Virus record (IMG/VR): IMGVR_UViG_3300046660_000219
Location: 141,909-205,908 of that record
Length of the DNA: 64,000 bases
Reading direction: 5' to 3' (one strand)
Below are positions 4,316 to 51,165 of the stretch, one piece after another. Positions within the stretch are counted from its first letter, which is position 1, and the number at the start of each line of letters is the position of its first letter. The position numbers were made by a program, and so were the translations under genes. The notes below the pieces were generated by a model. That model had not been told where the DNA came from. It made no database searches and saw nothing but the letters and a program-made list of their open reading frames with translations.

Positions 4316-4362
4316 CTTGTAAACCCATTAGCTGTCCATGTCAACCCTAGTCGGAAAAATTG
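4316..4362 (-). promoter_or_regulatory. Early sigma70-type promoter (repeat family)
   Basis: TTGACA(4344-4339)-17 bp-TACAAG(4321-4316) with upstream AATTTTTCCGAC. Confidence 0.8.
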
Positions 4363-20852: not shown

Positions 20853-21059
20853 TTAAACAGGAGACCAGCGCCAGTCATTGGCTTGTTTGTCGTCTTCGGT
20901 TGGTTTGTAACGGTAGCGTTCGCCGATGTCATAAGACTCGGCGAAGATTTCCCCATCCTGGCCTTTGGTGACTTGCTTGCACAGATCGTCATCGATCCAA
21001 GCTTGCCGGGTCATCCAGTTGCCTTGACGGGCCTTGATCATGGCTTCTTCGTAAGTCAC
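20853..21059 (-). CDS. DUF2829/Tad2-like protein (candidate immune-signal sponge)
   Basis: MTYEEAMIKARQGNWMTRQAW...YKPTEDDKQANDW matches the family pattern (F/Y)xEAxxxxxxGxxxxRxxW...PxxxDxxAxDW. Confidence 0.65.
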   Translation of the reverse strand: MTYEEAMIKARQGNWMTRQAWIDDDLCKQVTKGQDGEIFAESYDIGERYRYKPTEDDKQANDWRWSPV

Positions 21060-21147
21060 GGTTGGTTCCTTTCGGAAAATGTAGAGGTTTGGATGAACCC
21101 GCGCCTAAGCACGGGCTCCGCGAAGCATCTACCCTTTCGTGTGAGGT

Positions 21148-21576: not shown

Positions 21577-21940
21577 GATATTACCCTTTTCGTAGAAGCT
21601 TAGCTAGACACGCACCGGAGTGCGTGCCCGAGAAGCGCCTACAGGTTACCGGCGATGAACTTCGCCATGTCGCCGTACCAGACGGTCCAGACAACAAATG
21701 GATTTTCTGCGTAGTCGCGGTACGGCAGGTTCGGGAAGTTGGCGACGATGTGCGACAGCGAGTCACCTGTCGCGGCGACCTTAGTAACGCGATCGGCAAT
21801 ACCTACTGAACTAAGCCACGCCCGTATGTCGCTGGCTTCTGGTGTCTGGTACGTAATAGTATCCCAACGCTTTTCGTTCGAGTCGGAAGCCAGAACACCA
21901 GGTTCAAAGGTGACGATGATGGTCATGGTGTTTACCTTTC

Positions 21941-22330: not shown

Positions 22331-23118
22331 GGTGTTTACCTTTTAGAAAAGATGGACTGCCACACGTGCAACACGTCGAGCGGCAGCAATGAGCGCGCCA
22401 TAAGGGCGGGTATACCATACCCCGTAGTGGCGACGAAGATGATAGCCGGTATCCACATAGCGATTACCTTTATTCGATGTCGTCGTCGGCTTCAACCAAC
22501 GTGGCGAGACACCACACGTCATCGTAATAGTAGATAACAAGCAGCGCGATGATGTGCTCGCGGCCGGGCGCGTCCTCATGGCTGACGACGTACGCCGTTT
22601 TGTTCCCGAGGTACTGATGCAGCAAGACCGTCTGCGGAGCGCCAGTTCGTGCTGCACCGACGTACAGGCTACGAGCTGTGTCGGGAAAAATAGTAAACAT
22701 GTTTCCCACAGCCAAAGGCGTACCTTTGACGTCATTAGGTTGATGACCATGCATGTCGCAGACAGCTCGGCCCCAATAAGCCGAACCATCCATGGTGGCA
22801 GAGTGAAGGTTGATAGTGGCGTAGGCCATGGTTGTTACCTTTTCAGGTGAGAGGGCGTTTAGGGCAACCCGTGGCGCGTTGTCACGAGTTGAGTAGAAAC
22901 GTCCTAGTCGGCCAGGGCGGCGTACCGGGTACGCGTGGCAAAGTCGATCACCTCGCCGTACTGCGCCGGGTCGAAGGCGATCGGCATGGGGTCTTCGTCG
23001 TCGTTGATGTCCTCCCACCGTTGCAGGTCGGCGAGGATCGTATCGACGTCTTCGATTTCGACGTGGACCGGGTTAGCATTGAAGAGAGCGAGAGCCATGT
23101 TGATGTTACCTTTTTGTG

Positions 23119-23688
23119 CTAAGCGCAACGCTTAGCGTGGTTGCGTTGGAATTCTTCCGACATGGCCTTAGCCGTCTGATAGGCGGCGACCGGGTCGTTC
23201 TCGTAGCCAGCTTGCGCTTCCTGGCGCTTCACAGCGTCGGCGTGCGAGAGCTTGTAGTAGTTCTTGTAAAACTCGACAGAGAACGCAACGCGAAACTCGT
23301 GGGCGGCGCTGTCGTACTTAGCCTTCAGACCAAGCGCGTTAATGGCCGCAATAGCGCCCTTAACGGTAGGCTTAGCTTCAGGCGGCAGTGGCGTCGCCAG
23401 ATCGGCACGAATACCCGCGAGTGTACGGCTAGCCAGGGTGACGCCGGCAACGAGGTGTTGCACGCCGTAGAAGCCGCCGAACTCGTTGAAAAGGTAACGA
23501 TTCAGCGCGTAGTGACCGCCTTGGCTGATCTGCACGAAGTATTCGCGCGAACGCCCTTGAAAATCGACGAGCTTGACGCTCACGCCCCGGTCACTGTCTT
23601 GCGTCCAGGGTTGGAACGTGCACGTCGCTTCGGTAATCCCAATATCGGCGAGAAAATTGCGAATGCGTTTGACGAACTGGTTGGACAC
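23119..23688 (-). CDS. Hypothetical protein
   Basis: AAAAGGTAATC leader, GTG start. Confidence 0.7.
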   Translation of the reverse strand: MSNQFVKRIRNFLADIGITEATCTFQPWTQDSDRGVSVKLVDFQGRSREYFVQISQGGHYALNRYLFNEFGGFYGVQHLVAGVTLASRTLAGIRADLATPLPPEAKPTVKGAIAAINALGLKAKYDSAAHEFRVAFSVEFYKNYYKLSHADAVKRQEAQAGYENDPVAAYQTAKAMSEEFQRNHAKRCA

Positions 23689-23708: not shown

Positions 23709-23758
23709 TAACAGTTTGGACAGGTAGCGAGCGGACCCGCTACCCAACGAAACCGTTA
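23709..23758 (-). other. Conserved intergenic RNA stem-loop, copy 1
   Basis: Shared flanks and covarying upper stem with copies at 29550, 33163 and 33560. Confidence 0.65.
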
Positions 23759-24132
23759 TTATACGTCGGCTACGATAGACCCGTCCTCGGCAACTTCAAC
23801 GATCTTGATATGCGCGCCCAGGATCGTAAGCGCGATATTGACTTTTTCGATATTCATTTTCCGGGTGCACGCTTGCGCAGTGCCCGAAAATTCTCGCCAA
23901 CGGGCGTTCACTTTTTGCAGCATTTTGATGCTGATTGTAACGCGGCAATTCCGGCGCGGGTTCGGTACCTGTTCGAAAGCGAGAACGATAGACGAAACAG
24001 TTTCAGCGAAGACGACAGGGTTCCAAGTATCCAGCGGCTGGCAGGCGATACGCTTAACGGTCTTAGCCGGGGTCATGACGGTTACCTTTAACCGGTTGGT
24101 GTTGGGCGGCTGGCGAACCAACCTTGGACACC

Positions 24133-24180
24133 CTTGTAAACCCGATTCCTAACTCTGTCAACTGCTGTCGGAAAAATTGC
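24133..24180 (-). promoter_or_regulatory. Early promoter (repeat family)
   Basis: TTGACA(24161-24156)-17-TACAAG; upstream AATTTTTCCGAC. Confidence 0.8.
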
Positions 24181-24279
24181 CGATTAACACGCGCAACCCC
24201 TTACGGCACAAGGTTTAGCTCAGATACGACAAAGCCGCCCCGATTAAGGGCGGCTCGCGCAGTTACCAGCTTAGGGGCG

Positions 24280-24819
24280 TCATCGCTCACGAATAGGAGC
24301 CGCTTGCTCACGCGCCATACCGACGTGGTGCAGCTTGCGATTAAGTGGAATGCCATTACGGGTAACCACCTTCACCAGATTGAAAAACGCTGTCTCCGAC
24401 ATTGGTTGCATTAACGGTAGAATGCGCTGGCGTAGAAAATCTGTCAACACCATGTCGCCGGGAACTGCGTCCGAATACGTGTACGCACCGCACTGGTTAC
24501 TATTAAATGACGAGTGTATACGCAACTTGATCCCTTCAACCTCAAACACCTGATCAACCAAGTCCGGTAAATAAACAATAAGAGGAGTAGCGAGTGCGGT
24601 AGGACGTGGAGCAACACCGATGACCTCGGGCTCTATCCCTAGATGACGACGCACATAATCCGCACCGTTACCTTTAGCCGCTGTTATCTTCAGCTCTAGT
24701 GGGTATTCGTATGGGAATACCGGGCCGGGCATATCTGTCTTGAGTATAATGGTATCAGGACCGCCCCGATCGTGCGTGACGACGATAGCTTCGACGATGT
24801 TTAGCGTTATAGCAGGCAT
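24280..24819 (-). CDS. Hypothetical two-domain protein (paralog of 24830..25321)
   Basis: DTIILKTD...LELKI...GNGADY vs DTITLYTD...LSLKV...GKGADY. Confidence 0.7.
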   Translation of the reverse strand: MPAITLNIVEAIVVTHDRGGPDTIILKTDMPGPVFPYEYPLELKITAAKGNGADYVRRHLGIEPEVIGVAPRPTALATPLIVYLPDLVDQVFEVEGIKLRIHSSFNSNQCGAYTYSDAVPGDMVLTDFLRQRILPLMQPMSETAFFNLVKVVTRNGIPLNRKLHHVGMAREQAAPIRER

Positions 24820-24829
24820 GTTTAACCCC

Positions 24830-25321
24830 CTACGTGATCTTGCGCATGAGTGTTTGTGGCGATTGCGTCATGCCGGTGTAATCACGAAGCGATGCATAAG
24901 CGTTCTTCGGTAGTAGCGGCTTGATATAGTTGTTGAGGTAATGCCCGATTGTCATATCACGCGGTAGCGGCAACGGAGGTGATTGATAAGGGTACACACG
25001 CGCATCGTACGGATGCACGTATAGCCAAACCTTGTGCTCGGACCAGACGCGATCCATCAACTCAGCAACGGTGGTAGTGGGACCAGTCAACGCACCATCG
25101 TCGGTGACGTACTTAATGACGGTCACTTCATCGCTAAAATATAGCCGCGCGTAGTCAGCACCTTTACCGTAAGGCAAAGTCACCTTCAAACTAAGCACAT
25201 CATTTACGGTGCCACCAAATCTAGGCACATCCGTATATAGCGTAATGGTATCTTGTCCGTCGCCGTCCGGTTTACCTATCTCAACTTCCACCCGGCTGAT
25301 GTTGATAGTGTTTTTCGTCAT
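24830..25321 (-). CDS. Hypothetical two-domain protein (paralog of 24280..24819)
   Basis: AGGAG SD before MTKNT; shared motifs. Confidence 0.7.
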   Translation of the reverse strand: MTKNTINISRVEVEIGKPDGDGQDTITLYTDVPRFGGTVNDVLSLKVTLPYGKGADYARLYFSDEVTVIKYVTDDGALTGPTTTVAELMDRVWSEHKVWLYVHPYDARVYPYQSPPLPLPRDMTIGHYLNNYIKPLLPKNAYASLRDYTGMTQSPQTLMRKIT

Positions 25322-25401
25322 AGCGCTATAGCTCCTATAATTCCGAGCCGCCACTATACCACGCCGATCCTATAGGCCCAAATCGGCCGGACTCCAGGCA
25401 C

Positions 25402-25435
25402 GAAAAAGCCCCTAGAGGATCATCCTCTAGGGGCT
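25402..25435 (-). terminator. Intrinsic terminator
   Basis: AGCCCCTAGAGG/CCTCTAGGGGCT stem followed by a T run. Confidence 0.8.
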
Positions 25436-25464
25436 CGGCCGCTACCGTCTAGGGGTAGAGGTGG

Positions 25465-25641
25465 TTAGGCGGCTTCTAGGGCCGCCAGGGTGGCCTCACA
25501 GCCCTCGGCTTGGGCCTCGCGGGCGTCCGCCTCGGCGCGGGTGGCGTAGACCCCCAGGATCAGGCCCGAACGGGGGTCCGTGGCGGTGTGCAGGGTGGCG
25601 GGGGCGGTCGGGTAGGTAAAGATATCGGCTTGGTAGGTCAT
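25465..25641 (-). CDS. 58 aa GC-rich hypothetical protein
   Basis: GGAGG SD; MTYQADIF... Confidence 0.6.
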   Translation of the reverse strand: MTYQADIFTYPTAPATLHTATDPRSGLILGVYATRAEADAREAQAEGCEATLAALEAA

Positions 25642-25911
25642 GGCGGGTCCTCCGGGAGGGGGTTTCAGGTAGCGGCCGGTTGGCCTGAGACCTATATGGC
25701 ATGATTCCCTACCATATACAACGTGCCTGTAAGGAAAAGGTTGCCTAACCATAGTGTTTCTTAGGTGTGTTGCTACGATACTACACCCACTAAACGCAAA
25801 AACCCCACCGCGCCTAAGCACGATGGGGCTGCGGATACAAGCACGATAGGTCGGGTACGCTCTCCGCTTAGCTATTGCGGGCTCGCCAACGGCTCTCTTG
25901 CATCTAAACGC

Positions 25912-26739
25912 TTAGCTCACAGGAGCATCCACAGACGAGGCTGTGGTTTGACTAGCTACATGAGAGTTAGCGTCTTGGGTGGCGACCTGGCTATCCACGT
26001 GCCTATAACGGGCTATGTGGTCAGCTACGCGGGCGCAATAGGTACTGTTTACACGGGAGTTGCCTAGGCCTCGGTTGTACAGCGACACGGCGCGGCACGG
26101 ATTACCTTTAGCCAACCTATAGGCTTTCGCCAGATAGGCAGTCCCGTATTGCAGGTTCACGCTGGCGTCGAGTAGGCGCGATCGTGCGCCAGTAAAGCCA
26201 ACGGAACGGGCAGTGGACTCCTTGATTTGCATGAGACCTAACGCACTGGTTTGTGCGTGAGGGTTAAAGCCACTCTCTGTAGCGATCACGGCATAGATCA
26301 ACTCAGGTGGCAAATTGTGCGACAATGCTAACTGACGAATGGTAGCGTCATGCGCCGATACGAAGGCGAGAGGCGGACCACGTGTCAACGGTTTACCCTT
26401 TACGGGGTTAGCGGTAATGCTCGGATTGTTGATGTTATATGCGTACTGTTTTTCACTGGACTGGCGCTCCGCTGAGTGTACGCGCTTGGTGACAGCGGGC
26501 GCTTGCGTGGGCGTCGTCGTAGCCTCGTTAGTGTAGATCACGACTTCACGCGGTTTAGAAAAGGTAGTAGATGGCATAGTTACCGTGGGCGCGTTGCGCC
26601 ACAGAATGCCGATGAGCCCGCCGTCATGCATGACGTTCAGGGCTTGTAGGAGAAGGAGAGCTAAGGTCGTCGCGATTACGCCGACCAGACCTCGCGGAGC
26701 TTGTAAGGCTTGTGATTGAACATGCACTAGACTTCTCAT
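25912..26739 (-). CDS. Lytic transglycosylase (SLT domain) with N-terminal membrane anchor
   Basis: LIYAVIATESGFNP, ALGLMQI, NLQYGTAYL, YNRG; start position uncertain. Confidence 0.9.
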   Translation of the reverse strand: MRSLVHVQSQALQAPRGLVGVIATTLALLLLQALNVMHDGGLIGILWRNAPTVTMPSTTFSKPREVVIYTNEATTTPTQAPAVTKRVHSAERQSSEKQYAYNINNPSITANPVKGKPLTRGPPLAFVSAHDATIRQLALSHNLPPELIYAVIATESGFNPHAQTSALGLMQIKESTARSVGFTGARSRLLDASVNLQYGTAYLAKAYRLAKGNPCRAVSLYNRGLGNSRVNSTYCARVADHIARYRHVDSQVATQDANSHVASQTTASSVDAPVS

Positions 26740-26752
26740 TCGATTGTTGATC

Positions 26753-26792
26753 CAAAACACTAGCGGTGGCATTGACGCGCACCGCTAGTGTT
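26753..26792 (-). terminator. Intrinsic terminator
   Basis: ACACTAGCGGTG/CACCGCTAGTGT stem followed by TTT. Confidence 0.7.
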
Positions 26793-26986
26793 GGCGGCTA
26801 CAAATAGTAGCAGCACGACGCTTTAATAGTCGTCGATGGGCGGATGGTACGTCATGACGCAGTCCTTCCTTGTTTACGGTTTCAGCAAGTGTCAGAGAAA
26901 CGACAGGACGAGGTTAGTCGTCCTTGACGGGGAGACGGATCATACGAAACCTCCTCTACTGCTACAGAGTGAACTACCCTGTCAAA

Positions 26987-27613
26987 TTAGCGACGCCGCG
27001 CAATGCGCTCTAGCATGCGCGACAGAAAAGCGCGGATACCGCTTTCGCGCTTAGCCCCATACATGGCGTCGTGGTGCTCTACCAGTGACTGCATCATGAC
27101 TTTGTAAGTCTCTGCCGTGGGGTGCACACAGTCCGAACTAAGCGACGTATAAACATCTACTACCTTAACGTCGTTAGCGGCGCTGTACGGATCTACCATT
27201 TGTTCGAATGTCGGTGCAGCCGTGTCCATGTAGTGAATACGTGGCCCACGGCGACCCGGCCGATGTAGACGGCTTTGTGCTTGGAAGTTAAGATCCGGCT
27301 CGAACGTCACTGGCTCCATTTGGAAGTTCGAGATTTTTGAATAGTCTACCTTTACAGGTATGTCACTGTAGAGCTTCCCTTGAATGAGCGCCAACACATC
27401 CTTAGTGGCAGCCGCATTAACCGCTACACGCGCTGTTACAACGTCCAGACGTTGGATATCAAAGTAAGCGTAGGATTTCTTAGCCTTTCTCAACATCTCG
27501 TCGAGACGACACATTGCCTCTTGTCGCTTGGCTAGTGCGAACGTGGATGTGTTAGCCTGCCACAGCAGCAGCTTTACAAGGCTACGCACGCGTTGCGGCG
27601 CTCGCTTGGTCAT
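26987..27613 (-). CDS. Hypothetical protein
   Basis: ATGA-coupled to upstream gene. Confidence 0.7.
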   Translation of the reverse strand: MTKRAPQRVRSLVKLLLWQANTSTFALAKRQEAMCRLDEMLRKAKKSYAYFDIQRLDVVTARVAVNAAATKDVLALIQGKLYSDIPVKVDYSKISNFQMEPVTFEPDLNFQAQSRLHRPGRRGPRIHYMDTAAPTFEQMVDPYSAANDVKVVDVYTSLSSDCVHPTAETYKVMMQSLVEHHDAMYGAKRESGIRAFLSRMLERIARRR

Positions 27614-27939
27614 GGCAGGTTTCTTTCTTCATCTCGAAAAGTGTACGGAGCATTCTGATACGAATAGTCGTTCCAGAGGACGCCTTGATCATTAAGTACG
27701 TCCCAGGCGTCCTCGGACATACGCAGCCCGGTAAGACTGGTTACATTTTTGTCTTGCCAATCTCGAATAGTCTCGCCGCAACGTTTACAGCAGATACGGT
27801 GCTGGGTGACGGATTCAGCGACGTAGCAAGAAAAAGTATCACGAGATTTGCGATAACCGCGACGCACGGCAACGTGTGTCTTGTGTCCGATGCGTTCGCA
27901 CTTGAGACGTGGCGTACGCAATTCTTTCCACCAACGCAT
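27610..27939 (-). CDS. Hypothetical Cys/His protein
   Basis: CERIGH...CKRCG; AAAGGGTAACC leader. Confidence 0.65.
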   Translation of the reverse strand: MRWWKELRTPRLKCERIGHKTHVAVRRGYRKSRDTFSCYVAESVTQHRICCKRCGETIRDWQDKNVTSLTGLRMSEDAWDVLNDQGVLWNDYSYQNAPYTFRDEERNLP

Positions 27940-29193
27940 AGGTTACCCTTTCTCTTCTGGATCAAACTCCGCACGCAGCGTGTCGAATTCCGCTTGCTCC
28001 TCGTCTGTGAGACCAAACAGTGCGCCATCGTCCCGCAACGCACGAAAACGGCGCTTACGCTTAATCTGCGCAAACGCCACGTCGAAGTCGTCTTGTGTTT
28101 CTTGGGCCACTGCTAGCTCCCGTTGTCGGTTTCCATGTAGACGCTGCCAGTGTTGAGAAACACTAACACGGTGTGCGCCTTCTCTTCGTTCCGCACTCGC
28201 ACGATACGTTTGGACGCGGTGTTGTACGGCGGCTGCGTTGACGTCCGCACATAACCGATTTTCTCCAAGGCCAATATGGCGTCGTCGATCGTCTTGTAGT
28301 TCATGCGCGGCATAATCGCTACCTTTTAATACGCGTCTGTTATGATAGCAGAACGGCGGACACAGATTTTTGCACTGCCATGCCACGTGACCCAACCGCG
28401 AACAGCAACACCGCCCGCTGCCTCACAGGATAGCCTTTGCCGCATATCGGCGGCGTGAGCCTCTACACAAAAGGGTATGATAACTAGAGCAGTCACAACA
28501 CCCGTGATAGCCGCACCAAAAGCCATACGAAATTTTTTCATAGTCGTTACCTCTCGTCTATAGAACCTAAATGGTAGGAACCGGGTTGCCAGCCAAGAAC
28601 GAAAGCCATAGCAGCACCTTGTACCCAAGCGGCGGTTTCGTCGTCGTGACATTCGGTCTTGCGGACGTGTTCGCCCTCAAGAACTTGCACCTTCCACTGA
28701 CCAAAACAGCAGCTCGGGTCACAGCGGCAAGTGACCTTGCCGACTAGGACGCTACGTGCGAAAGCTTTGGCAGACATGGAGAAAGCCCCTACAGCGAGCC
28801 GGTCTGACGACGCGTTGTAGGGGTTATAAGACCCAAAGTGGGTAGGTGTCAATCGATCGAGCTTGGATTCGCCTAGTAGGCGAGTAGCGCTCGTGTAGCT
28901 TGTGCTACCTTTTCTTGCGAATTTTCGCCATGGCTTCGAAGTAGGTATTCAATTCGTTGAACGCCGCTACAGGCATAGTCTCGTTAGCCAAAGCTTCGAT
29001 AGTATCATCGATACCCGGCATATCGCGCGACAAAACAGTAGCCATTGCACCCATACTCGTTAGCGATAAACCTTCATCATCGTAGGTCATCAGGCCAAGC
29101 TCGATCAGGTTAGCGGGCATACCACCAAGCCAGAGCTTAAGAAATAATACTTCATCGCCACTCAAAGCGCGGGAAAGCGGCTGGGTCATGATA

Positions 29194-29526
29194 TTACCTT
29201 TTTTTCGTAATGCCATAGGCGTCGCTCACGGTGATATAGGTGTCGTAGATCGGTTGGCAGACGTCGGCGGGGACGGGTTTATCCTTTTCACGCAGCGGTA
29301 CGGGTTGCACTTGCGTGCAGGACGCGTACAGCCCGCCAATCGCGCTGACGACCTGTTGGCGGCCCTCTTGGCGCGCCGTCTCCATGTTGTTGAAATAGAT
29401 CTGCGAGCCGAAGCCCACGACCATCAGCACGACGCCGAAGATGGCGACCGCGAAGCCTGCGTTGAAGCCACGCGTGGTAGCGCGGTCGTTATAGTAGACT
29501 TGGCCGTCAATGGATTCGGTAGACAT
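29194..29526 (-). CDS. Single-TM membrane protein
   Basis: Hydrophobic segment FAVAIFGVVLMVVGFG; AAGGGG SD. Confidence 0.65.
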   Translation of the reverse strand: MSTESIDGQVYYNDRATTRGFNAGFAVAIFGVVLMVVGFGSQIYFNNMETARQEGRQQVVSAIGGLYASCTQVQPVPLREKDKPVPADVCQPIYDTYITVSDAYGITKKR

Positions 29527-31129
29527 ATGAATTCCCCTTGGTTGATAGATCAGCTTGGCGCGTCACGCGGCGAACCACGTGACTAACGAAACTGGTATAC
29601 TATTACTGTATGATCACATGCGGTGTGACGCCTTCGTCAACGATCCACGCCGCTGTTTCGTGATCACTTACGTTTGCTAACATTTCGTTAGCTTCAGCCA
29701 AGGTATCATAACGATCATAGACAACCGCCGCTAGCGGGTGCTTATCGTACAGGCTATTTAGGTCAGCCGCCCATAGAGCGTACCGTTTAGCTGCTTCGCT
29801 CATGGTTCAAACTCCTTCACGTTGGGCGATGACGCCACTGTTGTAGGCGCAGAGTTGGGCTTGCTGGTTTTCGTCCAGCCAAGGCGAGTAACGGATAGGT
29901 GGGCGCTTACCGGCCTCGCCGTGCAATTCGTCCTGCCAGCCGGCGTAAAACCAACGACGGTGGGGATTGAACAGGCCACCCCATTGTAGCGCCGCCTTAC
30001 GCATACGCTGGCGATCTTGTCGGGAAGCGCTGTTGGTCAAGATGTACCACAGCCGCCAAACCACCAGTGCCACGATTGCGCACGTAACGATGTTGTCAAT
30101 GTTGACGTCAGGCATGACCCTTACCCTTATCAGTTCAGACAGTCTCTTGGCGAACCAAGAGACCAACAGAGCCGATACTATTAATCATCGTCTTCGTCGT
30201 ACTCTTCGGTGTAATCGTGCTCTTCCCAATCATCATCCGTGTCAGCGGTATCGTCGTTGTAGACGACAGGCGGACCCGCCAACCATTTCACGAGAAGATA
30301 GAGTCCGCCAAAGAAGAGAACGGCCAATAGAAAAACCCCTAGAGTGTCCGTGTCCATCGTCCTACCTTTTCTTCTTGAGACGCTTACGCACCTCGCTTTC
30401 CAGCGCGGAGACAACAGCGTTGTGAATTTCGAGTATGCGCGGGTTACTATCGCCGAGACGTGCGGTTTGCACTAAGGTTTGGACGAGAACGTCGTCCGTC
30501 ATGCTCTTAACTTTAAGGATAGTGCTTTCGGCGTTCGCCTGCGTGTTCGCTAGGCGCTTAGCTTCATTGGCGCGAGATTCTTCGCCTTGGGCTTGGATGA
30601 CGTCACTCCAGCTATCGAGACTCATTATCTTACCCTTTTCTGTAGCGCACCACGGTGCGCGCGTTGTTGAAGTACTTGGCCGCAACTTCCCGGCAGGAGA
30701 GTGCGCCACACAGGCCAAACAGCAGGCCGTAGATGATGGGTCCGAAGTGCATGTCAGTTACCTCCCATACGAGCGAGAATGATAGCCTTAGCCTCGTGGC
30801 CGACACGTTCCCAGCCCTTGATTTCCTTGTACGACATAGACGTCTGAACGACGGTCGTTTGCACAGCGATATCGTAGAAGGCCAATAACCGTTCGTTGCT
30901 CACGAGCTTGCGCTTGCTGCGCATCTCAGTAAGCGCGACCTGGAAATCTCGTAGCGACATTTCCGTACGATTGGGCTGTTCACGCGTTTCGTCGTGAGGG
31001 CGCATCATGTGCGGCATAGCGTTTCCTAGATCAGGTGCAGGCCGCGAGCCACGACGGCGCAGCCTAGAGTGATAAGGGTAGCGCCACCAAGAACGGTGCT
31101 GGCAGCGCGAGCGATGTAGGCAACGGCAC

Positions 31130-31645
31130 TCATTGTTCGTTCTCCACCAAAGCAGCGCGCTTCTCAGCTAGCCACACTTGCGCAGCGATTTGCGCCTTGT
31201 TCATCCATTGGACGGCATACGCTACGTCCCACGACTTCGGAGCCGACGCCATCGCCAGCTTGCTAATCAGGGTGTACCCGTAATCGTTAAGGGTACCGTG
31301 CACGAAGCAGACGCCGTTCGGGATCTCCGGGTGCGCGTCAACGAACGCGTTTACTTGCTCCTGCACCACCAGCAGCGACTTGTACGCGCCATGCGGGTTG
31401 AAGTAGTGGAATTGCGCCCGTTGCTTGACGTTCATACCTTTATCGGTCGTCACGGTCTTGCTGATGTCATCCCACGACAACGCCTTACGATTGCGCGCCA
31501 GCTTGAAGTCGTAGCAGTTGGTGCAGCGCCAGCCCTTGCGCATGTCGTCGTTGAAATCCAGCGTATGGGTAACGCGACCCACTTGCGGATAACGATCGTT
31601 AGGCGGGCAGCACGCGCGGCACGGCATCTTCTTGCTGGTAGACAT
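31130..31645 (-). CDS. Zn-ribbon-containing hypothetical protein
   Basis: CRACC...CTNC; GGAGG SD; first gene after promoter. Confidence 0.7.
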   Translation of the reverse strand: MSTSKKMPCRACCPPNDRYPQVGRVTHTLDFNDDMRKGWRCTNCYDFKLARNRKALSWDDISKTVTTDKGMNVKQRAQFHYFNPHGAYKSLLVVQEQVNAFVDAHPEIPNGVCFVHGTLNDYGYTLISKLAMASAPKSWDVAYAVQWMNKAQIAAQVWLAEKRAALVENEQ

Positions 31646-31683
31646 GGCGTTGGCCTCCCGGCCGGTTGATCACCTTGACCACC

Positions 31684-31740
31684 CTTGTATAGGCGCTAAC
31701 GAGACCTGTCAACCCTAGTCGGAAAAATTTCCGACTAGGG
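31684..31740 (-). promoter_or_regulatory. Early promoter fused to a palindrome
   Basis: TTGACA(31712-31707)-17-TACAAG; CCCTAGTCGGAAA-AA-TTTCCGACTAGGG at 31713-31740. Confidence 0.8.
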
Positions 31741-32517
31741 GCGCTTATGCGGCTTAACTGGCTTTAACGGTCTAACGGGACGCACCGGTTTAACAGGCGG
31801 AGCCGGGTCAGGCTTGCGGACTGACTTAGGCCTAGCGTCAACATTCTTGCCGTACACCGGCCGCTCTTTGGTCACGCGCACGGGAGGTGGGTTACCAAGC
31901 GCAGCCTCGCGGCGTACCTTTAATCGCCACAGCAGTTCGCTCTTGTACGCGTTCTTCTGGCGCTCATACAGTGGAAGGAATGCACCAACACCCCGGTTGT
32001 AACACGTCGTCGCCGCAACAAGGCCCTCGACCAAATCAATGTCTTCTTTCTTAGAAATAGTAGCTTCCACTAACAGTGTCAGATCGGTTACCTTTTCCAA
32101 GCGTTCTTGTTCCGCCTCCAACCTGGATTGTCTTTCGCCGCGCGTTTCGTCCTCCGGTCCTGGGCGATTGCTACCATTGGCGATGATGTCGAAAAACCGC
32201 TGATAGTCACCGTCAGCTTCGCCGCTCTTCCGGCGGGCTTTGCGTTCGGCCTTGTCTTGCCGGCTCCATGTACCCTTGTCAGTGGCGAACGCCGATCCGC
32301 TTAAGCTCCAGTGCGACTTTCCGCTACCATTAACAACAGTGTCGTCACTCGGCGCGGCCGTAGTTTCCCCTAGATCTTCTAACACCTTTCGGCGCAGGGA
32401 CGTAGGAACGCCCCGCTTTGGGGGCGGGGCGTGCTTCTTTCCGGCGGACACGTCATGAGCGTGGACCTTAGGTGACGCGAGACTTGGATTGCCTACCTTT
32501 TTCACAGGCTTCTTCAT
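31735..32517 (-). CDS. Basic Lys/Pro-rich hypothetical protein
   Basis: AGGAG SD before MKKPV; PVKP repeats. Confidence 0.7.
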   Translation of the reverse strand: MKKPVKKVGNPSLASPKVHAHDVSAGKKHAPPPKRGVPTSLRRKVLEDLGETTAAPSDDTVVNGSGKSHWSLSGSAFATDKGTWSRQDKAERKARRKSGEADGDYQRFFDIIANGSNRPGPEDETRGERQSRLEAEQERLEKVTDLTLLVEATISKKEDIDLVEGLVAATTCYNRGVGAFLPLYERQKNAYKSELLWRLKVRREAALGNPPPVRVTKERPVYGKNVDARPKSVRKPDPAPPVKPVRPVRPLKPVKPHKRP

Positions 32518-33861
32518 TGGCGCGAATGCTCCTAATCGATAGCCAGACAATACACGCCTTCTCGTGGCGTGTCTAATGCCGGGTTTGTGGCAACACGTAG
32601 TGCCCAATGACAAGTGCACCGCCCCAGGTCATTTGAACGCTGGCGGCAAACGGACTCGCGTTAGTTGCGGCGACCATGGTTTCGTAGAAGCGAAGGGCGG
32701 CCAAACCGTCATCGTAGGCCGCGCAAATCACTTGTACGAGGTCACCGCAACTAGCGCGGGCGGTAACAGTAAACAGCTCTTCCACTAGACGGCGACGCCG
32801 CTTTTACAGAAGACCGCTAGCACGCGATCTTCACTGTCAGTCAGCCGCACGTCGGTAATAGTAGAACCAGACAGCAGGCCAAGTAGCATGTAGCTGCCGA
32901 AGTGTGTAGCGGCATCGGCCGAGTCGGTGTACGTCTGTGAGGTCGCGCTAGTAGTGGAGCGCGCCTCCAGCGTGTAGGTGAGAGCCATAAGAAAAACCTT
33001 TCCTTAGAAGACAGCGCGGAAGGCCGCGATGATACCGACCCACGAGCCGATCACGGCGGCCAGCACGAAGACGCGCGACCAGTGGATGCGCTGATGAAGC
33101 GGAGCGCGCACGGTCTCGACGATAGTGACGTTCATAATGGTAGCTCCTTTGTTTATGTGTTCTAACAGTCTGGACAGCCGGGTGGCGCGCCACCCGGCAA
33201 ACGAGAACGTTAGGCGTAGTGATATTCGCCGCACATATCGGAGTGTTGGCGGCCATTGTCGGGACAACCGCACGGACGGTAATCGTTCTCTTCGTAGAAC
33301 GGTTGCGGCTCGTTAAAAGCGCCTTCTCGTTCTAAGGCCGCGTACAGCGCCGACTGATACAGCATGTCGCGTACGCTGGCGTCGTCTTGCGAAAGGTAGG
33401 CTCGCACGTGGTTGTCATGAAAGCCCATGTGGCCCTCGATCACGTCCACGTCCCACGAACGCTTGCGATCGGCTTCCGTGATGACCGGCAGAAAACCGAT
33501 CGGTCCCAGAGCTTCAAGTTCGGCGACGGTTTGCATCGAAGTGTGTCCTTAGAAAAAGATAACAACTTGGACAGTTAGCGGGACGCGTCCCGCTAACCAA
33601 CGAAGCCGTTAGGCATAGCGGTATTCATCGAATTCGATGGCCCAACCACGCGAGGCTTGCGCACCGCTCATGTAGTGATCGAACTCGTTGCGAATGTCCG
33701 CGATTTGCGGGAGCAAGCCAGTCGAACCCGTTTCCCGAAACTTGCGCAGCATTGCCGCCATCTCTATGCGAGCCATGCGGGCACGATTAAGGTAGTGAGC
33801 TATCCAGCGACGATGCGAGTAGTCAGACATGGTGGTGAGTCCGTGTTGCGTTGTTGAAGCC

Positions 33862-33908
33862 TATGTAAACCCGTTAACCGGCACTGTCAAGCCTAGTAGG
33901 CAATTTTT
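33862..33908 (-). promoter_or_regulatory. Early promoter (repeat family variant)
   Basis: TTGACA(33890-33885)-17-TACATA with upstream A/T tract. Confidence 0.7.
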
Positions 33909-34329: not shown

Positions 34330-34420
34330 AGTGTCCTACTATTAATGTTGATCCATACGAGAAAACCCCAGGAGCAATTCGGCTCCTGGGGTTACAGTTT
34401 ATTGATAGAAGAAGTCCAAC

Positions 34421-35122: not shown

Positions 35123-36409
35123 CTACGCCACCAGTGACAGACGCGGTTCCAATTTACCGCGTGTCAGGTACTTCTCTTCTAATGCTGACGCACCTAGCGG
35201 TAACAGGGGCACGACATGCTGGTCAAACCACCACTCTTCGCTAGCGTCAGGGAAGTAGGCCTTGTACATGCGTCGCGCTACTGTTTCATCGAGAGCCTTG
35301 ACCTCTTCGATCAAGCCAAAGCGGCCGGGACGCAACAGCGCAGGATCTAGTGTTTCCAGACGGTTTGTCGTAATAGCTAGCATACGACCTTCTCGCGAGG
35401 CAATCCCGTCGAAGGCGTTGAGTACACCACCAAGAGTAAGTTCCCCTTCGCGGCGCTCTTTCTTTTTCTCGTCAAGCAGCCCTTTTGTGGAGACACTACC
35501 CTTACGAGGAAGATCGTCGTCAGCTTTAGCGGCCTTGCGCTTGTGCACGACCTCATGCGTGTCGATGTCCTCAATCACACCAAAACCGTTCGGGCCGATA
35601 CCATTCACCGCCGATTGTAAGCCAGCGTCACCGCCAACCTGAGACAGATTGATGATGTAGATGGATCGGTTGATTGCACCAGCGAACGCCGCAATCAACG
35701 TGCTCTTGCCGGTACCGGGTTGGCCAAAGAAACAGTAGCCACGACGATATGGCGTTCCACGCGATCGGTAGACCTCTTTGCTGACGCAGAACTCCCGCAT
35801 GTCGTTGAGAATACGCGCCTTGGTCTCCTCATCCATGAAAATAGTATCTAGCGAGCGCTTGTACTTGTGATCGATCAATATGTAGCCCTTGCCGTCCCAG
35901 TAATGCACCTTCAGCGTATCCGTGCCTTCATGCAGATCTCGGGCGGCTTGAATCAGGTCGCGAATAGGCTGCTGAGAGCGCCCGATAGTGCGAAGAACGA
36001 TGTCCCCGCGCCGACGTCCTCCGAACAGTGAACCTAGGCCGCCCTCATCTTTAAAAACGCGGTTGATCAGGATGATGCTACCTTTATGCCAGATAACATG
36101 CCAGCCCGTACCGATCGTAACGCTCCACGTCCACTGCATTTGGCTGTAGTCGTAGTTTTCGGTCATCATGAGTTCGCGTGAGTTATTGGCCTTGTTCTCA
36201 CGTGCCAACCACGCGCTCATCATACCGTAAACGTCGTCTTCACTGTGCAGCGTCATGGTCACGGTGAAGAAATACAAGAACGCCGACCAGATTTTGGCGG
36301 GAACAGCCTTGAGGCTGTACGTGACCGTACCGGCGATGGTTGCACCAACCAAGCCCACTAGCATTTGGTTGGTCTGAAATTGGTTAGCTACCCAACTGAA
36401 AAGCGACAT
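35123..36409 (-). CDS. BCS1-like membrane-anchored AAA+ ATPase
   Basis: N-terminal TM, GTPYRRGYCFFGQPGTGKS, IEDID, LNAFDG, TTNRLETLDPALLRPGR. Confidence 0.88.
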   Translation of the reverse strand: MSLFSWVANQFQTNQMLVGLVGATIAGTVTYSLKAVPAKIWSAFLYFFTVTMTLHSEDDVYGMMSAWLARENKANNSRELMMTENYDYSQMQWTWSVTIGTGWHVIWHKGSIILINRVFKDEGGLGSLFGGRRRGDIVLRTIGRSQQPIRDLIQAARDLHEGTDTLKVHYWDGKGYILIDHKYKRSLDTIFMDEETKARILNDMREFCVSKEVYRSRGTPYRRGYCFFGQPGTGKSTLIAAFAGAINRSIYIINLSQVGGDAGLQSAVNGIGPNGFGVIEDIDTHEVVHKRKAAKADDDLPRKGSVSTKGLLDEKKKERREGELTLGGVLNAFDGIASREGRMLAITTNRLETLDPALLRPGRFGLIEEVKALDETVARRMYKAYFPDASEEWWFDQHVVPLLPLGASALEEKYLTRGKLEPRLSLVA

Positions 36410-39881: not shown

Positions 39882-39916
39882 GAAAACCCCGTGGCCTTTA
39901 CGGGACCACGGGGTTT
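39882..39916 (-). terminator. Intrinsic terminator after nrdB
   Basis: AAACCCCGTGG/CCACGGGGTTT stem. Confidence 0.75.
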
Positions 39917-39921
39917 TACTA

Positions 39922-43794: not shown

Positions 43795-45326
43795 TTTGTT
43801 ACGACCCTTGTTGTGCGTTGTTAGTATTTATTGCGGACGGAAGCGACGCTCCGGAATCCACACGCCGTTGACGCGCACCTGACAGCCGCCGACAAACTTG
43901 TAGCGGGTCTGTACACCGTCGTACGCCGTGGCGCAGTTAATGCGCTGCGGCACTTGTTCGATCAACTGAACTGCGCCGATAAACAGCAACAGTGCCGCAA
44001 CACAGAATGTCATGTAGACCCACGGAAGGTCCCAAAATCTGCGCTTATCATTACGAAAAGCAGAACGTAAACCAGGATGAGGGTTCATGCTCATTGTTTC
44101 TTACCTTTATGATTTTTGGACCAAGAGATCCACGGGAGGGATGTTGAGTTCGTGTTGTGCGTTGGCTACGAGACGCAACGTCTCTAGGTCTTGCTGCACC
44201 TTGTCTGGGGCTGCGGAGTCACGCGCCACTAGGCGCAGCAGATCGGTCACGCGAGCAAAACCCTCTGCGACGTCGTTGGACAGCACGATGAATTTGACGT
44301 CGCCGTTGACCTGATACGGAGCCTTGTACAAGCTATCGTTCAGATAACGGTAGAATTTTTTGAGTTGGGTTTTATGCAACGCGGGCGTTTCACCGATACC
44401 GGGCGCTACGACCACGGCTTCATTTTGGCGCAACAGAGCGTTGGCACGGGCCGCTACTTGCGCCCAGGTCTTCTTGACCATGTGGTATCCCTACTATTTA
44501 TGTTAATAGGGCTTCAGACACGAAAAAGCCCTCGGAAGTCCAGAATGAATTAGCTCCGGAGTACCGAGGGCTCTTTAAAGAGCGTGTGCTGGCTTCTGTT
44601 AGGTGTGGATGATCCCGAGGATCATACTAGCCACGACGAGAAAGATAGCTGCGCCAATGACGATGACGGCCACCTTGCGGCTCTTGCTCAGTTCTTGCGT
44701 CACGTTGTGTCGTCCTTGTGTTAGTGGGAAAAAGGTACGCATATAAAGGAGGCTAGGGACGTCCCTAGCCTCCTAAGAAGATGTGATCATCTTGCGATGC
44801 GTCTACCGGCTTTAGAAAGCCTTGGATCGCGCCGTCAACGACGACGGCGGCTAGAAACCATCCATCGCGACTGGCAACCGTACAGTAGACATTGCCTTGG
44901 TGATACTGCCCATACCACCAGTCCATTGAGGTCATGTAAAGGGTAGCGGCAACACGTGTCTCGTACGGAGTTTCGAACAGGCAGATGGGATCGATGGCTT
45001 GATTGCTCCCTACCGTTACTAACTCATAGAGGGTCATTGTCGTCCCCGTCGAATTTCGCGCATGGCGTCGCGCCGTAGGCGCGTGCCGTGTTGTTTGTCG
45101 TACGCCTTGACGACGGTGTCTAGGTTGCCGCCGACCTTGCGACCAAGCGCAAGGTTGAGAGTGGCCGCGCTGCACACCTCACAACGCCTATAGCGCTTCG
45201 GGTCGTACGTATGACCGCAATTGCTGCACGTCGTCTTAACGGGCTTCTGGGCCATATTCGGGTTCCTATTGCCGGGGCGGTTAGGGCGACGCATACCATT
45301 TCTGATATGCGTCGAGTAGAACCGTC

Positions 45327-45770
45327 TCAGTCGTACAGCGCCGACATGTCGAACTTGTCGGCCACGCTCCAGGCTTCCAGCTTGGCGACAAACACGTCTT
45401 GTGCTGCACGTATACGCGCCTGTTTGTCGGCGATGTTGGCGTCACCGGACATGGCGCGACGACAAGACGCCTGCTGATCATTGATGGCTTCGAACAAAAC
45501 CAAGATCGACGGCTTGGCGGCAACCTGCGACAGCTCGCCTTCGAACTTTACGCTCCCTCCGCTAGTGAAACTGAAAATAGTAACGATGCAACCGTTACCG
45601 TCCGCCGCCGCGTGCGACGTGGTCCCCATGTACGCGAATTGGGGGTTAGCCGTCTTCCAGGCTTTAGCCGCCGCTACAGCGACGTCCTTACCGTCGAAGC
45701 GAAACCCACTACCTTTGGTGGCGCTTAGCTCGTAGCTAAACGCAAGATCGGGATGCAGCGCTGTGTCCAT
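45327..45770 (-). CDS. Hypothetical protein
   Basis: AAGGA SD. Confidence 0.65.
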   Translation of the reverse strand: MDTALHPDLAFSYELSATKGSGFRFDGKDVAVAAAKAWKTANPQFAYMGTTSHAAADGNGCIVTIFSFTSGGSVKFEGELSQVAAKPSILVLFEAINDQQASCRRAMSGDANIADKQARIRAAQDVFVAKLEAWSVADKFDMSALYD

Positions 45771-46594: not shown

Positions 46595-46641
46595 CTTGTA
46601 GACCCGTTAGAACACGCTGTCAACAGGGATAGGAAATTTTT
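46595..46641 (-). promoter_or_regulatory. Early promoter (repeat family)
   Basis: TTGACA(46623-46618)-17-TACAAG; upstream AAAAATTTCC. Confidence 0.8.
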
Positions 46642-47925: not shown

Positions 47926-47997
47926 TGGGTTTCACCTAACGGAGTAGCGAAGTCGGTGAGCCTGTAAGACCCACCGACTGAACAACACCGTTACTAT

Positions 47998-50477: not shown

Positions 50478-50955
50478 GGTGTATTGAACCTCAGTGAAGG
50501 GTTGCGCCAATGGCGGCAACGGCGAAAAAGGTAGCTGGTCCCGCAGCGGCTATCATAAAGACTAAATAGAAGGCGCTGAAGGCCCACGGGCTCATCGTAC
50601 TGATATACTTGTCGCACTTGCACGCCACAACCATCGACAGATACGACCACAGAATTGTGGCCACGGTAAATCCAAAGCAAGGCCAATTCATGGTAGCTAC
50701 CTTAATTGGTGCAGTAGACTTGCACGTGGCGTAGATGGCGATCGAGAAGAATACTAGCTAGCGTACCGCGCTGTGCGGCGCTTTCCGCATCAGGTAACGC
50801 GCGTTTAGCCGCGTTACTCACAGGACCACGCGATTTAGTAAGGCTGCGCAATTTCTCGATAGTGATAGTTTCCGGACCCTTCATCGAAGTTCTCCATAAT
50901 AGTAAGATGGTGGCGAGGCCGGTAGGTACCAAAACCTACCGGCCGAACGACGACC

Positions 50956-51165
50956 TTACGTTTGCGGTGTCGCGGTGCGACGGCTAGTCTTACCGCCCTT
51001 CGTACCAGCTAGGGAGGCCAGTTCCCGGCTCTGGGAGAACGAACGCTTAGCCTTCGGCACGGACGCACCGCCCTTGCGGGCGATTTCACGACGGCGATCC
51101 GGGTCCATAGCGGCGAAACCGCGACGACCGCGCGGAGCTTCCGTGGTGTTGGTGGTGTCGGTCAT
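50956..51165 (-). CDS. KGG-repeat general stress protein
   Basis: RGFAAMDPDRRREIARKGG...RELASLAGTKGG. Confidence 0.88.
   Translation of the reverse strand: MTDTTNTTEAPRGRRGFAAMDPDRRREIARKGGASVPKAKRSFSQSRELASLAGTKGGKTSRRTATPQT

What the first reader, a model, noticed from the sequence alone, without database searches (positions are those of the whole stretch)
23709..33611. Family of intergenic RNA elements with conserved internal loop and covarying stem
Copies at 23709-23758, 33163-33212 and 33560-33611 read on the mRNA as UAACG..UCGUU(G/U)-[hairpin]-UGUCCA...UGUUA; a looser fourth copy is at about 29550-29595. Each sits between a stop codon and the next RBS. Upper stems differ in sequence yet keep pairing (GGUAGCG/CGCUACC, GCCGGGUGG/CCACCCGGC, GUUAGCGGGA/UCCCGCUAAC), and no U-tract follows. 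Similar architecture occurs at about 21080-21130, 21598-21637 and 22853-22903. Inference: RNase III-type processing sites as in T7 early mRNA, antitermination elements, or protein-binding sites.
Basis: partly seen in the sequence, partly recalled or inferred. Interest (0 to 1): 0.7.

Follow-up and report, generated by a model that had tools for sequence, protein, structure and literature searches.

The report
Conserved hairpins between phage early genes
An uncultivated 206-kb soil phage carries at least eight copies of a 50-nt two-tier RNA hairpin wedged between early genes; it most likely marks where long early messages are cut and stabilised, as in phage T7, but no RNA data exist to show this.

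Summary
The window is the right 64 kb of a complete 205,908-bp phage genome from a rhizosphere metagenome.

- **Copies.** Eight copies of a 50-57-nt element lie on the minus (mRNA-sense) strand between window 21 and 51 kb. There is also one divergent copy and a separate two-copy sub-family. Each starts 0-16 nt after a stop codon and ends 11-27 nt before the next start codon.
- **Relative.** Two more copies lie in the only close relative found, an 8.3-kb metagenomic contig.
- **Structure.** A sequence-only alignment of the ten copies supports one fold: 92% of cells paired, 15 of 20 pairs with compensatory changes, slid controls 32-43%.
- **Conserved core.** A U-A pair, a pyrimidine-pyrimidine mismatch that is never a Watson-Crick pair, an invariant G-C pair, then 2-3 non-Watson-Crick U/C-rich pairs. 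This core sits between a 6-9-bp lower stem and a 9-13-bp upper stem, about two helical turns in all.
- **Strand.** G·U outnumbers A·C 22 to 4, so the sense strand folds.
- **Context.** The copies lie inside operons driven by sigma-70-like promoters and have no U-tract, whereas real terminators nearby do.
- **Databases.** No Rfam family matches. The phage encodes no RNase III, integrase or Y1 transposase.

Best reading (about 0.45): cleavage and stabilisation signals for host RNase III. Function is untested.

The parts
23709..23758 (-). Copy A. It starts directly after the stop codon of the 105-aa gene 23759-24076 and ends 20 nt before the GUG start of gene 23119-23688.
   Evidence: dG -25.0, z -5.2. 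R1 scores 69.8 bits and R2 62.0 bits.
33560..33611 (-). Copy B. Its first UAA is the stop codon of gene 33609-33830.
   Evidence: dG -26.9, z -5.7. R1 scores 62.6 bits and R2 57.2 bits.
33163..33212 (-). Copy C. Its first UAA is the stop codon of gene 33210-33536. Its flanks are nearly identical to those of the copy at L009:6256-6308.
   Evidence: R1 scores 66.4 bits and R2 63.4 bits.
29548..29597 (-). It is the positional ortholog of L009:7887-7938, upstream of the conserved 110-aa gene.
   Evidence: R1 scores 61.2 bits and R2 56.4 bits.
30128..30177 (-). Copy E (not in the finding). Here the mismatch is U·U. This copy and the 58-aa gene upstream of it (30181-30357) are absent from the relative L009.
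   Evidence: R1 scores 66.6 bits and R2 59.4 bits.
47937..47993 (-). Copy F (not in the finding). It lies right after the NAPRTase-like gene 47998-49536. The upper stem is 13 bp and the mismatch is U·U.
   Evidence: R1, built without this copy, scores 24.2 bits, E 0.004. (dG -30.9, z -6.2).
50903..50958 (-). Copy G (not in the finding). Its first UAA is the stop codon of gene 50956-51165.
   Evidence: R1, built without this copy, scores 24.4 bits, E 0.003. (dG -29.2, z -6.0).
21082..21131 (-). It has the same U-A / C·C / G-C core and a weaker lower stem. It lies upstream of a gene with a Tad2-like domain.
   Evidence: R1, built without this copy, scores 18.5 bits, E 0.08..
21593..21641 (-). 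The architecture is the same but the core is not kept.
   Evidence: R2 scores 25.3 bits, E 7e-4, and R1 15.8 bits. Fold z-score -4.1.
22853..22905 (-). It is a two-tier hairpin with a conserved CUACU / CCCU internal loop and is not matched by the covariance models.
   Evidence: There is no R1 or R2 hit.
45275..45327 (-). Sub-family 2, copy I. It has the same loop sequences as H, and its lower stem is compensated relative to H (U-A changed to G-C).
   Evidence: dG -24.1, z -4.7.
24133..24161 (-). Context: a sigma-70-like early promoter (TTGACA-N17-TACAAG, followed by ggtg) that heads the operon holding A, H, J and K.
   Evidence: The same promoter type occurs at 31684-31712 (operon of E and D), 46595-46623 (operon of I) and 4316-4344. 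None occurs on the plus strand.
31684..31712 (-). Context: the early promoter heading the operon that holds E and D.
25406..25436 (-). Context: a canonical intrinsic terminator (14-bp GC-rich stem followed by UUUUU). It serves as a contrast to the elements.
   Evidence: Further U-tract terminators lie at 34364-34393, 39883-39917, 44747-44774, 62511-62540 and 25801-25830.

Best explanation
**What it is.** The elements are cis-acting RNA structures on the polycistronic early mRNAs of a jumbo phage.
- Host RNA polymerase starts at TTGACA-N17-TACAAG promoters and reads through runs of small genes.
- Between some genes the transcript folds into a helix of about 23 bp, interrupted by a conserved imperfection: a Y·Y mismatch, a G-C pair, then 2-3 non-Watson-Crick pairs.

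**How it most likely works.** I infer that host RNase III binds this two-turn helix. Because of the imperfection it nicks one strand in or beside the internal loop.
- The upstream message then ends in the stable upper hairpin, which protects it from 3' exonucleases.
- The downstream message begins about 25-45 nt before its start codon with a free RBS.

**Shown versus inferred.**
- Shown: the family, its fold, its strand, its intercistronic and intra-operon placement, its difference from terminators, and its conservation in a relative.
- Inferred: cleavage, the enzyme, and the consequences.
For: **Fold.** The sequence-only alignment A4 of 10 copies gives 92% paired cells, 15 of 20 pairs with double changes and 44 compensated cells. 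No shuffle of 500 reached these values, and slid controls gave 32-43%. RNAalifold finds the same fold.

**Strand.**
- G·U outnumbers A·C 22 to 4.
- Sense-strand covariance-model scores are 48-63 bits, against 18-31 bits on the reverse strand.

**Conserved imperfection.** Across the 10 copies, column 10·49 is C·C in 8 and U·U in 2, and column 11-48 is G-C in all 10. Columns 12·47 and 13·46 are never Watson-Crick pairs.

**Placement.**
- The elements sit 0-16 nt after stop codons and 11-27 nt before the next start codon in the window (62 nt for one L009 copy).
- They lie inside operons headed by promoters found only on the minus strand.
- They lack U-tracts, while at least 6 hairpins in the same region have them.

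**Conservation in a relative.**
- The relative L009 is collinear with the window, with neighbouring proteins 41-61% identical. It has two copies scoring 42.6 and 38.2 bits with a model built without them.
- One of these is the positional ortholog of D. Its lower stem is fully compensated and its core is kept.

**Geometry and literature.**
- The five T7 early intergenic regions folded here show upper stems of 9-13 bp with loops of 3-5 nt. That the known RNase III cleavage sites lie just 3' of these upper stems rests on site positions I recalled from Dunn & Studier 1983, not verified here.
- This family has 9-13-bp upper stems.
- RNase III substrates typically span two helical turns. Internal loops or mismatches restrict cleavage to one strand and leave protective 3' hairpins (PMC3867540 and PMC1540722).
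Against: - There is no RNA evidence at all: no RNA run was listed for this phage.
- The host is unknown, so its RNase III rules cannot be applied.
- RNase III has weak sequence specificity, so conservation of particular loop nucleotides may instead point to a sequence-specific factor. T7 sites are equally conserved among themselves, which weakens this objection.
- There is no sequence similarity to the T7 sites and no Rfam match.
- A third, more distant relative (L146) has lost the 3' half of the element upstream of the orthologous gene, so the element is dispensable there.
- The ten copies are paralogs and orthologs from only two genomes, so the covariation counts are not independent events.
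Confidence: 0.45

Rival explanations
1. The element is a binding or cleavage site for a sequence-specific factor other than RNase III. This could be a phage early protein among the many ORFans, or a host RNA-binding protein or endonuclease. It would recognise the conserved internal loop and control the stability or translation of the flanking genes.
For: - The identity of the loop nucleotides, and not only the non-pairing, is conserved: UCGUU on the 5' side and UGUCCA or UCGCCA on the 3' side. This holds across copies and in the relative, while both stems vary freely.
- The mismatch is always pyrimidine-pyrimidine.
- A second sub-family (H and I) has its own conserved loop. This fits recognition modules.
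Against: - No candidate protein was identified. No dsRBD, RegB or RNase III domain was found in the phage.
- The flanking genes have no Pfam or PHROG match that hints at RNA binding.
- Loop sequence conservation is also seen among bona fide T7 RNase III sites.
Confidence: 0.2
2. The elements are passive intercistronic stabiliser or insulator hairpins that are never cut themselves. They would block 3'-to-5' exonucleases after cleavage elsewhere (selective RNA processing and stabilisation), or uncouple translation of neighbouring genes.
For: - The hairpins are stable (-20 to -31 kcal/mol), lie immediately 3' of ORFs and have no U-tract.
- This general mechanism is documented for operons (PMC10667835, listed; abstract only was read).
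Against: A simple barrier needs no conserved mismatch, no invariant G-C pair and no fixed two-tier geometry. Selection keeps column 10·49 unpaired in all 10 copies.
Confidence: 0.15
3. The elements are factor-dependent transcription terminators, attenuators or antitermination sites (nut/put-like) that time delayed-early expression.
For: The hairpins are intergenic, lie inside early operons and lack U-tracts.
Against: - The apical loops are variable in both sequence and length (3-10 nt), unlike boxB.
- There is no conserved single-stranded boxA-like flank.
- The phage uses ordinary U-tract terminators elsewhere.
- Nothing in Rfam matches.
Confidence: 0.08
4. The elements are DNA-level features. 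They could be borders of mobile gene cassettes (attC-like or PeSL-like recombination sites) or a miniature mobile repeat that folds as single-stranded DNA.
For: - Copy C and L009:6256-6308 are nearly identical in the lower stem and loop, yet they are flanked by unrelated genes.
- The unit 'gene 30181-30357 plus copy E' is present here and absent from L009.
- B and C begin with GCCTAAC, which fits the attC R'' consensus RYYYAAC.
Against: - The phage has no tyrosine recombinase (the control search matched in 14 of 14 genomes) and no Y1 transposase or RAYT.
- Most copies fit neither the R'' consensus nor the R' consensus GTTRRRY.
- The wobble pairs favour the sense strand, 22 G·U against 4 A·C. 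In my recollection attC recombination uses the bottom strand (not checked here).
- Shuffling at conserved intergenic sequences can be a by-product of homologous recombination.
Confidence: 0.07

Closest known systems
RNase III processing signals of the phage T7 early region (R0.3, R0.5, R1, R1.1, R1.3)
   Same: - Both are intercistronic and sit tight against the upstream stop codon, in a polycistronic early transcript made by host polymerase.
- Both have a lower stem, an internal loop and an upper stem of 9-13 bp with a small loop (one search compared).
- Copies within each phage share conserved loop-proximal sequence.
- Neither has a U-tract.
- The expected products are an upstream mRNA protected by a 3' hairpin and a downstream mRNA with a free leader (PMC3867540, PMC1540722).
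   Different: - There is no sequence similarity. T7 copies share ..CAAGGUC..GGCCUUUAUGAU.., while this family shares UCGUU..UGUCCA.
- Here the imperfection is a near-symmetric run of non-Watson-Crick pairs, not an asymmetric loop.
- Here the lower stem is a solid 6-9 bp, often starting with the stop codon itself.
- The host, the enzyme and the cleavage are all unknown.
- The genome is a 206-kb myovirus-like phage with no phage RNA polymerase of the T7 type.
Integron attC sites (ORF plus a 3' imperfect palindrome, folded as a single strand)
   Same: - Both sit right after the stop codon of small promoterless genes that lie in one orientation.
- Both have conserved outer arms, an unpaired central part and a variable terminal stem-loop.
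- There are signs that 'gene plus element' units differ between relatives.
   Different: - There is no integrase.
- Most copies do not meet the R''/R' consensus.
- The sense strand, not the bottom strand, has the better pairing.
- Only about 10 of roughly 80 genes in the region carry an element.
Intrinsic (Rho-independent) terminators
   Same: Both are GC-rich perfect hairpins placed after a gene.
   Different: These elements have no U-tract. They also have an extra lower stem and a conserved internal loop, and they lie inside operons. The same phage has canonical terminators elsewhere.
Lambda nut (boxA/boxB) and HK022 put antitermination RNAs
   Same: Both are cis-acting RNA hairpins in early transcripts.
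   Different: In boxB the loop is the conserved part, whereas here the loop is the variable part. No boxA-like flank is present, and no Rfam family matches.

Membership tests
T7-type RNase III processing signal | Lies between cistrons of a polycistronic early transcript made by host RNA polymerase | tested here: met
   The elements lie 0-16 nt after stop codons and 11-27 nt before the next start codon in the window. They sit downstream of sigma-70-like promoters found only on the minus strand, with no terminator in between. Transcription itself is inferred from sequence.
T7-type RNase III processing signal | Irregular hairpin of about two helical turns, with an internal loop or mismatches at the presumed target site | tested here: met
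   There are 23-27 stacked positions in all: a 6-9-bp lower stem, a conserved run of 5-6 non-Watson-Crick positions with one G-C pair, and a 9-13-bp upper stem. This is comparable to the T7 sites folded. The criterion comes from PMC1540722 and PMC3867540.
T7-type RNase III processing signal | Cut by RNase III at a defined phosphodiester, with ends that depend on rnc | not testable with these tools
   No RNA run was listed for this phage. The DNA runs hold only identical copies.
T7-type RNase III processing signal | Sequence homology to the T7/T3 site consensus | tested here: not met
   The T7 sites share ..AAGGUC..GGCCUUUAUGAU... This family has no such sequence, and there is no Rfam match.
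Intrinsic terminator | GC-rich hairpin followed directly by a U-tract | tested here: not met
   The 3' arm of the upper stem is followed by UGUCCA.. or UCGCCA... None of the copies appears in the terminator scan.
Integron attC | Terminal consensus sequences R'' RYYYAAC and R' GTTRRRY | tested here: not met
   R'' fits only in B and C (GCCTAAC). R' fits in none: the copies read GTTAACT, GTTATCT, GTTAGAA and GTTAGAG. D, E, G and K lack AAC..GTT altogether.
Integron attC | A cognate integron integrase (tyrosine recombinase) is present | tested here: not met
   PF00589 has no match in the complete genome, and the control search matched in 14 of 14 genomes. A host-encoded enzyme cannot be excluded.
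Integron attC | The bottom strand is the functional folded strand | tested here: not met
   On the sense strand there are 22 G·U against 4 A·C. The covariance-model scores on the reverse strand are lower by 17-44 bits.
REP / IS200-IS605-type hairpin repeats | An associated Y1 (HUH) transposase or RAYT | tested here: not met
   PF01797 has no match in the genome, and the control search matched in 10 of 14 genomes.
Lambda nut-like antitermination site | Conserved apical loop (boxB) plus a conserved single-stranded boxA | tested here: not met
   The apical loops differ in sequence and in length (3-10 nt). The flanks outside the lower stem are not conserved.
Any Rfam family | Reaches the family's gathering score | tested here: not met
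   There are 0 matches in the whole window on either strand.

The most novel reading that the evidence does not exclude
The element may be the 3' module of mobile early-gene cassettes ('ORF plus element'). A dedicated, still unidentified phage-encoded factor would read its conserved internal loop. The element would then serve both as an RNA processing or regulatory signal and as the linker at which accessory (for example anti-defence) genes are swapped between related jumbo phages. That would be a phage counterpart of the integron cassette logic, without an integrase.
Probability: 0.1. Interest if true: 0.7.

Novelty: new member of a known kind. Interest (0 to 1): 0.45.

Why it matters
If these are processing signals, T7-style maturation of early messages by host RNase III is also used by a very different phage: a large, uncultivated soil phage. 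They would also provide a compact RNA motif of about 50 nt, with good covariation support, that is not in Rfam. Such a motif could be used to annotate operon structure in related metagenomic phages, and to test how conserved mismatches steer single-strand cleavage. The conserved pyrimidine mismatch next to an invariant G-C pair is a concrete, mutable feature for that test. The finding adds to a known principle and does not overturn one.

Tried and rejected
- **Close phage records.** Megablast of 13 kb and tblastn of a 600-aa protein against 50,697 phage records found nothing. The large terminase is only about 33% identical to cultured Rhizobium, Pseudomonas and Erwinia jumbo phages.
- **Pattern scans.** Scans of viral contigs (0 and 13 hits) and metagenome contigs (117 hits) gave only chance matches. 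No locus scored above 23.3 bits with the models.
- **Covariance model on other phages.** R2 found nothing in four cultured jumbo phages or in one IMG/VR relative. That relative has a terminase 51% identical, is 68% complete and lacks the early genes tested. The positive control on the phage's own genome found 8 copies plus 1.
- **Relatives via the BCS1-like ATPase.** Only L009 is syntenic. The other hits are unrelated siphovirus-like contigs.
- **Relatives via the 110-aa gene.** A word-index search found nothing. A profile search found L146, whose element is degenerate.
- **The 205,604-bp NCBI metagenome contig with a terminase 47% identical (L147).** It could not be searched beyond ±3 kb because the record is not held.
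- **Sequencing runs.** Three DNA runs hold only identical sequence, so there is no population variation. No RNA run was listed.
- **Generic two-tier hairpin scan.** It was not selective: 67 of 167 hairpins on the plus strand and 54 of 157 on the minus strand passed. I dropped it as a criterion.
- **Generic promoter and terminator scan.** It showed no enrichment. The phage's own promoter type has a -10 element that the scan excludes.
- **Tandem duplication of B and C together with their genes.** Rejected: only the last five residues are alike.
- **Loop motif GCTTAGGCGC shared by K and a terminator.** Only two exact copies exist, so it is not significant.
- **Complex prediction with RNase III.** Not run, because any hairpin would beat shuffled RNA.


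Full report
**Where the window lies**

- The window is the last 64 kb (141,909-205,908) of a single 205,908-bp contig. IMG/VR classes it as a complete virus with direct terminal repeats.
- The DNA comes from rhizosphere metagenomes.
- The genome encodes a portal protein, a large terminase, a DnaB-like helicase, a DNA polymerase and a UvsX-like recombinase. Within the window it encodes the ribonucleotide reductase small subunit, ThyX, an NAPRTase and a BCS1-like AAA ATPase.
- The terminase is only about 33% identical to those of cultured Rhizobium, Pseudomonas, Xanthomonas and Erwinia jumbo phages, so this is an undescribed lineage.
- From about 92 kb to the right end nearly all genes are on the minus strand. 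In the window they are small, tightly packed and mostly have no known relatives.
- There are no tRNA genes and no Rfam matches.

**The observation**

- I listed every gap between minus-strand genes and folded each one. This gave more copies with the same layout: 30128-30177, 47937-47993 and 50903-50958.
- It also showed that 21082-21131 shares the core.
- A covariance model (R1) built from five copies was searched over the whole genome with filters off.
  - It scored its five seed loci at 61-70 bits.
  - It scored four loci it was not built from at 24.4, 24.2, 18.5 and 15.8 bits.
  - All of these are on the minus strand between window 21 and 51 kb.
  - The reverse strands of the seed loci scored only 17-27 bits, and the other 142 kb gave nothing.
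- A second model (R2) built from ten copies added only 21593-21641, at 25.3 bits and E = 7e-4.
- The site at 22853-22905 has the same two-tier shape but a different conserved loop, CUACU/CCCU. It shares that loop with 45275-45327, whose lower stem is compensated. I treat these two as a second, two-copy sub-family.

**Structure**

- MAFFT aligned the ten copies by sequence alone, in one register.
- On that alignment the proposed fold has 92% of cells paired. Fifteen of 20 pairs show changes on both sides, with 44 compensated cells, and no shuffle of 500 reached these values.
- Sliding the 3' partners by 1-3 columns drops pairing to 32-43%.
- RNAalifold predicts the same fold independently.
- Single sequences fold this way with z-scores of -2.5 to -6.2.
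- Reading from the base of the hairpin to its tip, the anatomy is:
  - a lower stem of 6-9 bp that always opens U-A, A-U;
  - a U-A pair;
  - a pyrimidine-pyrimidine mismatch (C·C in eight copies, U·U in two, never a Watson-Crick pair);
  - a G-C pair present in all ten copies;
  - two or three U/C-rich non-Watson-Crick positions;
  - a perfect upper stem of 9-13 bp with a loop of 3-10 nt that varies in sequence.
- The helix therefore spans about two turns.
- In paired cells G·U outnumbers A·C 22 to 4. Together with the strand asymmetry of the model scores, this says the sense strand, meaning the mRNA, is the strand that folds.

**Context**

- In nine of the ten copies the element begins 0-5 nt after the stop codon of the upstream gene. 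In B, C, G and one L009 copy the first UAA of the element is the stop codon itself.
- In the window the element ends 11-27 nt before the next start codon, just ahead of the RBS.
- The same strand carries a clear promoter family, TTGACA-N17-TACAAG followed by ggtg, at window 4344, 24161, 31712 and 46623. None occurs on the plus strand.
- A variant promoter at about 33890 was read by eye from the gap folded.
- The same strand also carries ordinary hairpin-plus-U-tract terminators, for example at 25406, 25801, 34364, 39883, 44747 and 62511.
- The elements lie inside these transcription units, one to four per unit, and none has a U-tract after the upper hairpin.

**Relatives**

- Only one close relative was found: an 8.3-kb contig (L009). 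It is collinear with window 37.7 to 29.2 kb, and its proteins are 41-61% identical.
- L009 has two copies on its gene strand. They scored 42.6 and 38.2 bits with the model built without them.
  - L009:7887-7938 lies upstream of the ortholog of the 110-aa gene, exactly where copy D lies. It keeps the core and part of the upper stem, while its lower stem is completely compensated.
  - L009:6256-6308 is nearly identical to copy C in the lower stem and the core, and its upper stem has compensatory changes. The flanking genes are unrelated.
- The unit 'gene 30181-30357 plus copy E' has no counterpart in L009.
- A more distant contig (L146) keeps only the 5' part of the element upstream of the orthologous gene.
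- Scans of IMG/VR and JGI metagenome contigs, four cultured jumbo phages and one partial IMG/VR relative gave nothing.

**Interpretation**

- The conserved imperfection argues against a plain terminator or a plain stabilising hairpin. Neither of those needs a position that is kept unpaired in every copy.
- Variable apical loops and unconserved flanks argue against nut-like sites.
- A DNA-level role was considered because of the cassette-like differences between the two phages, and because B and C start with GCCTAAC. Several results argue against it.
  - The complete genome has no tyrosine recombinase and no Y1 transposase, and both control searches worked.
  - Most copies fit neither attC terminal consensus.
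  - The strand bias is the wrong way round for attC, as I recall the attC mechanism (bottom-strand recombination; not checked here).
- What remains is an RNA signal read on the early polycistronic message.
- The closest known system is the set of five RNase III sites in the T7 early precursor.
  - Folding the five T7 intergenic regions shows upper stems of 9-13 bp with small loops.
  - It also shows sequence conserved among the five sites next to the internal loop, tight placement after the upstream stop codon, and no U-tract.
  - The cleavage positions I marked are recalled from Dunn & Studier 1983 and were not verified with a tool.
- Reviews and experiments on E. coli RNase III report three relevant points (PMC3867540, PMC1540722):
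  - substrates typically span two helical turns;
  - internal loops or mismatches confine cleavage to one strand;
  - single-strand cleavage leaves a protective 3' hairpin.
- The phage itself encodes no RNase III, dsRBD or RegB-like protein, so the enzyme would be the host's.

**What I commit to**

- I commit to host RNase III processing and stabilisation signals, at about 0.45.
- The main rival is a sequence-specific factor that reads the loop, at 0.2.
- The family shares no sequence with the T7 sites, so it works like them in my reading but is not a homologous member.

**Limits**

- There are no transcript data.
- The host is unknown.
- All copies come from two genomes, so the compensatory changes are not independent events.
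- Gene calls are my own simple ORF and RBS calls.

Noticed in passing
whole genome; e.g. window 29598-29604, 30178-30183, 47994-48000 (minus strand), 50895-50901: The 7-mer AATAGTA occurs 152 times over both strands, against about 15.5 expected. In the right arm, 15 of the 36 sense-strand copies sit within 25 nt (mostly 0-10 nt) upstream of a start codon. The 50 antisense copies are mostly inside ORFs and show a frame bias. The motif abuts copies D, E and F on their 5' side and copy G, inverted, on its 3' side. Its function is unknown.
   Followed up: partly
window 4316-4344, 24133-24161, 31684-31712, 46595-46623 (minus strand); about 33856-33890: There is a family of sigma-70-like early promoters, TTGACA-N17-TACAAG followed by GGTG, found only on the minus strand. 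The promoters at 31712 and 4344 are directly preceded by a near-identical hairpin ending ..TTTTTCCGACTAGGG.
   Followed up: partly
window 20853-21059 (minus strand): The 68-aa gene right after element K matches the Pfam Tad2-like (Thoeris anti-defence 2) domain at 26.9 bits, against a cut-off of 25. This suggests the region holds anti-defence genes.
   Followed up: no
window 35123-36409 (minus strand): A BCS1-like AAA ATPase (BCS1_N plus AAA domains) is encoded in a phage early region. Homologs 37-39% identical sit inside the structural modules of unrelated siphovirus-like contigs.
   Followed up: partly
window 22853-22905 and 45275-45327 (minus strand): A second, two-copy family of two-tier intercistronic hairpins has its own conserved internal loop (CUACU / CCCU) and a compensated lower stem.
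   Followed up: partly
L146:479-585 and L146:2192-2269: A distant relative also carries two-tier hairpins between small genes, but with other loop sequences. The one upstream of the ortholog of gene 29194-29526 has lost the 3' half of the element.
   Followed up: partly
window 33609-33830 and 33210-33536 (minus strand): The two genes upstream of copies B and C are unrelated apart from their last five residues, EYRYA and EYHYA. Sequence conservation of the element therefore runs about 15 nt into the coding region.
   Followed up: yes
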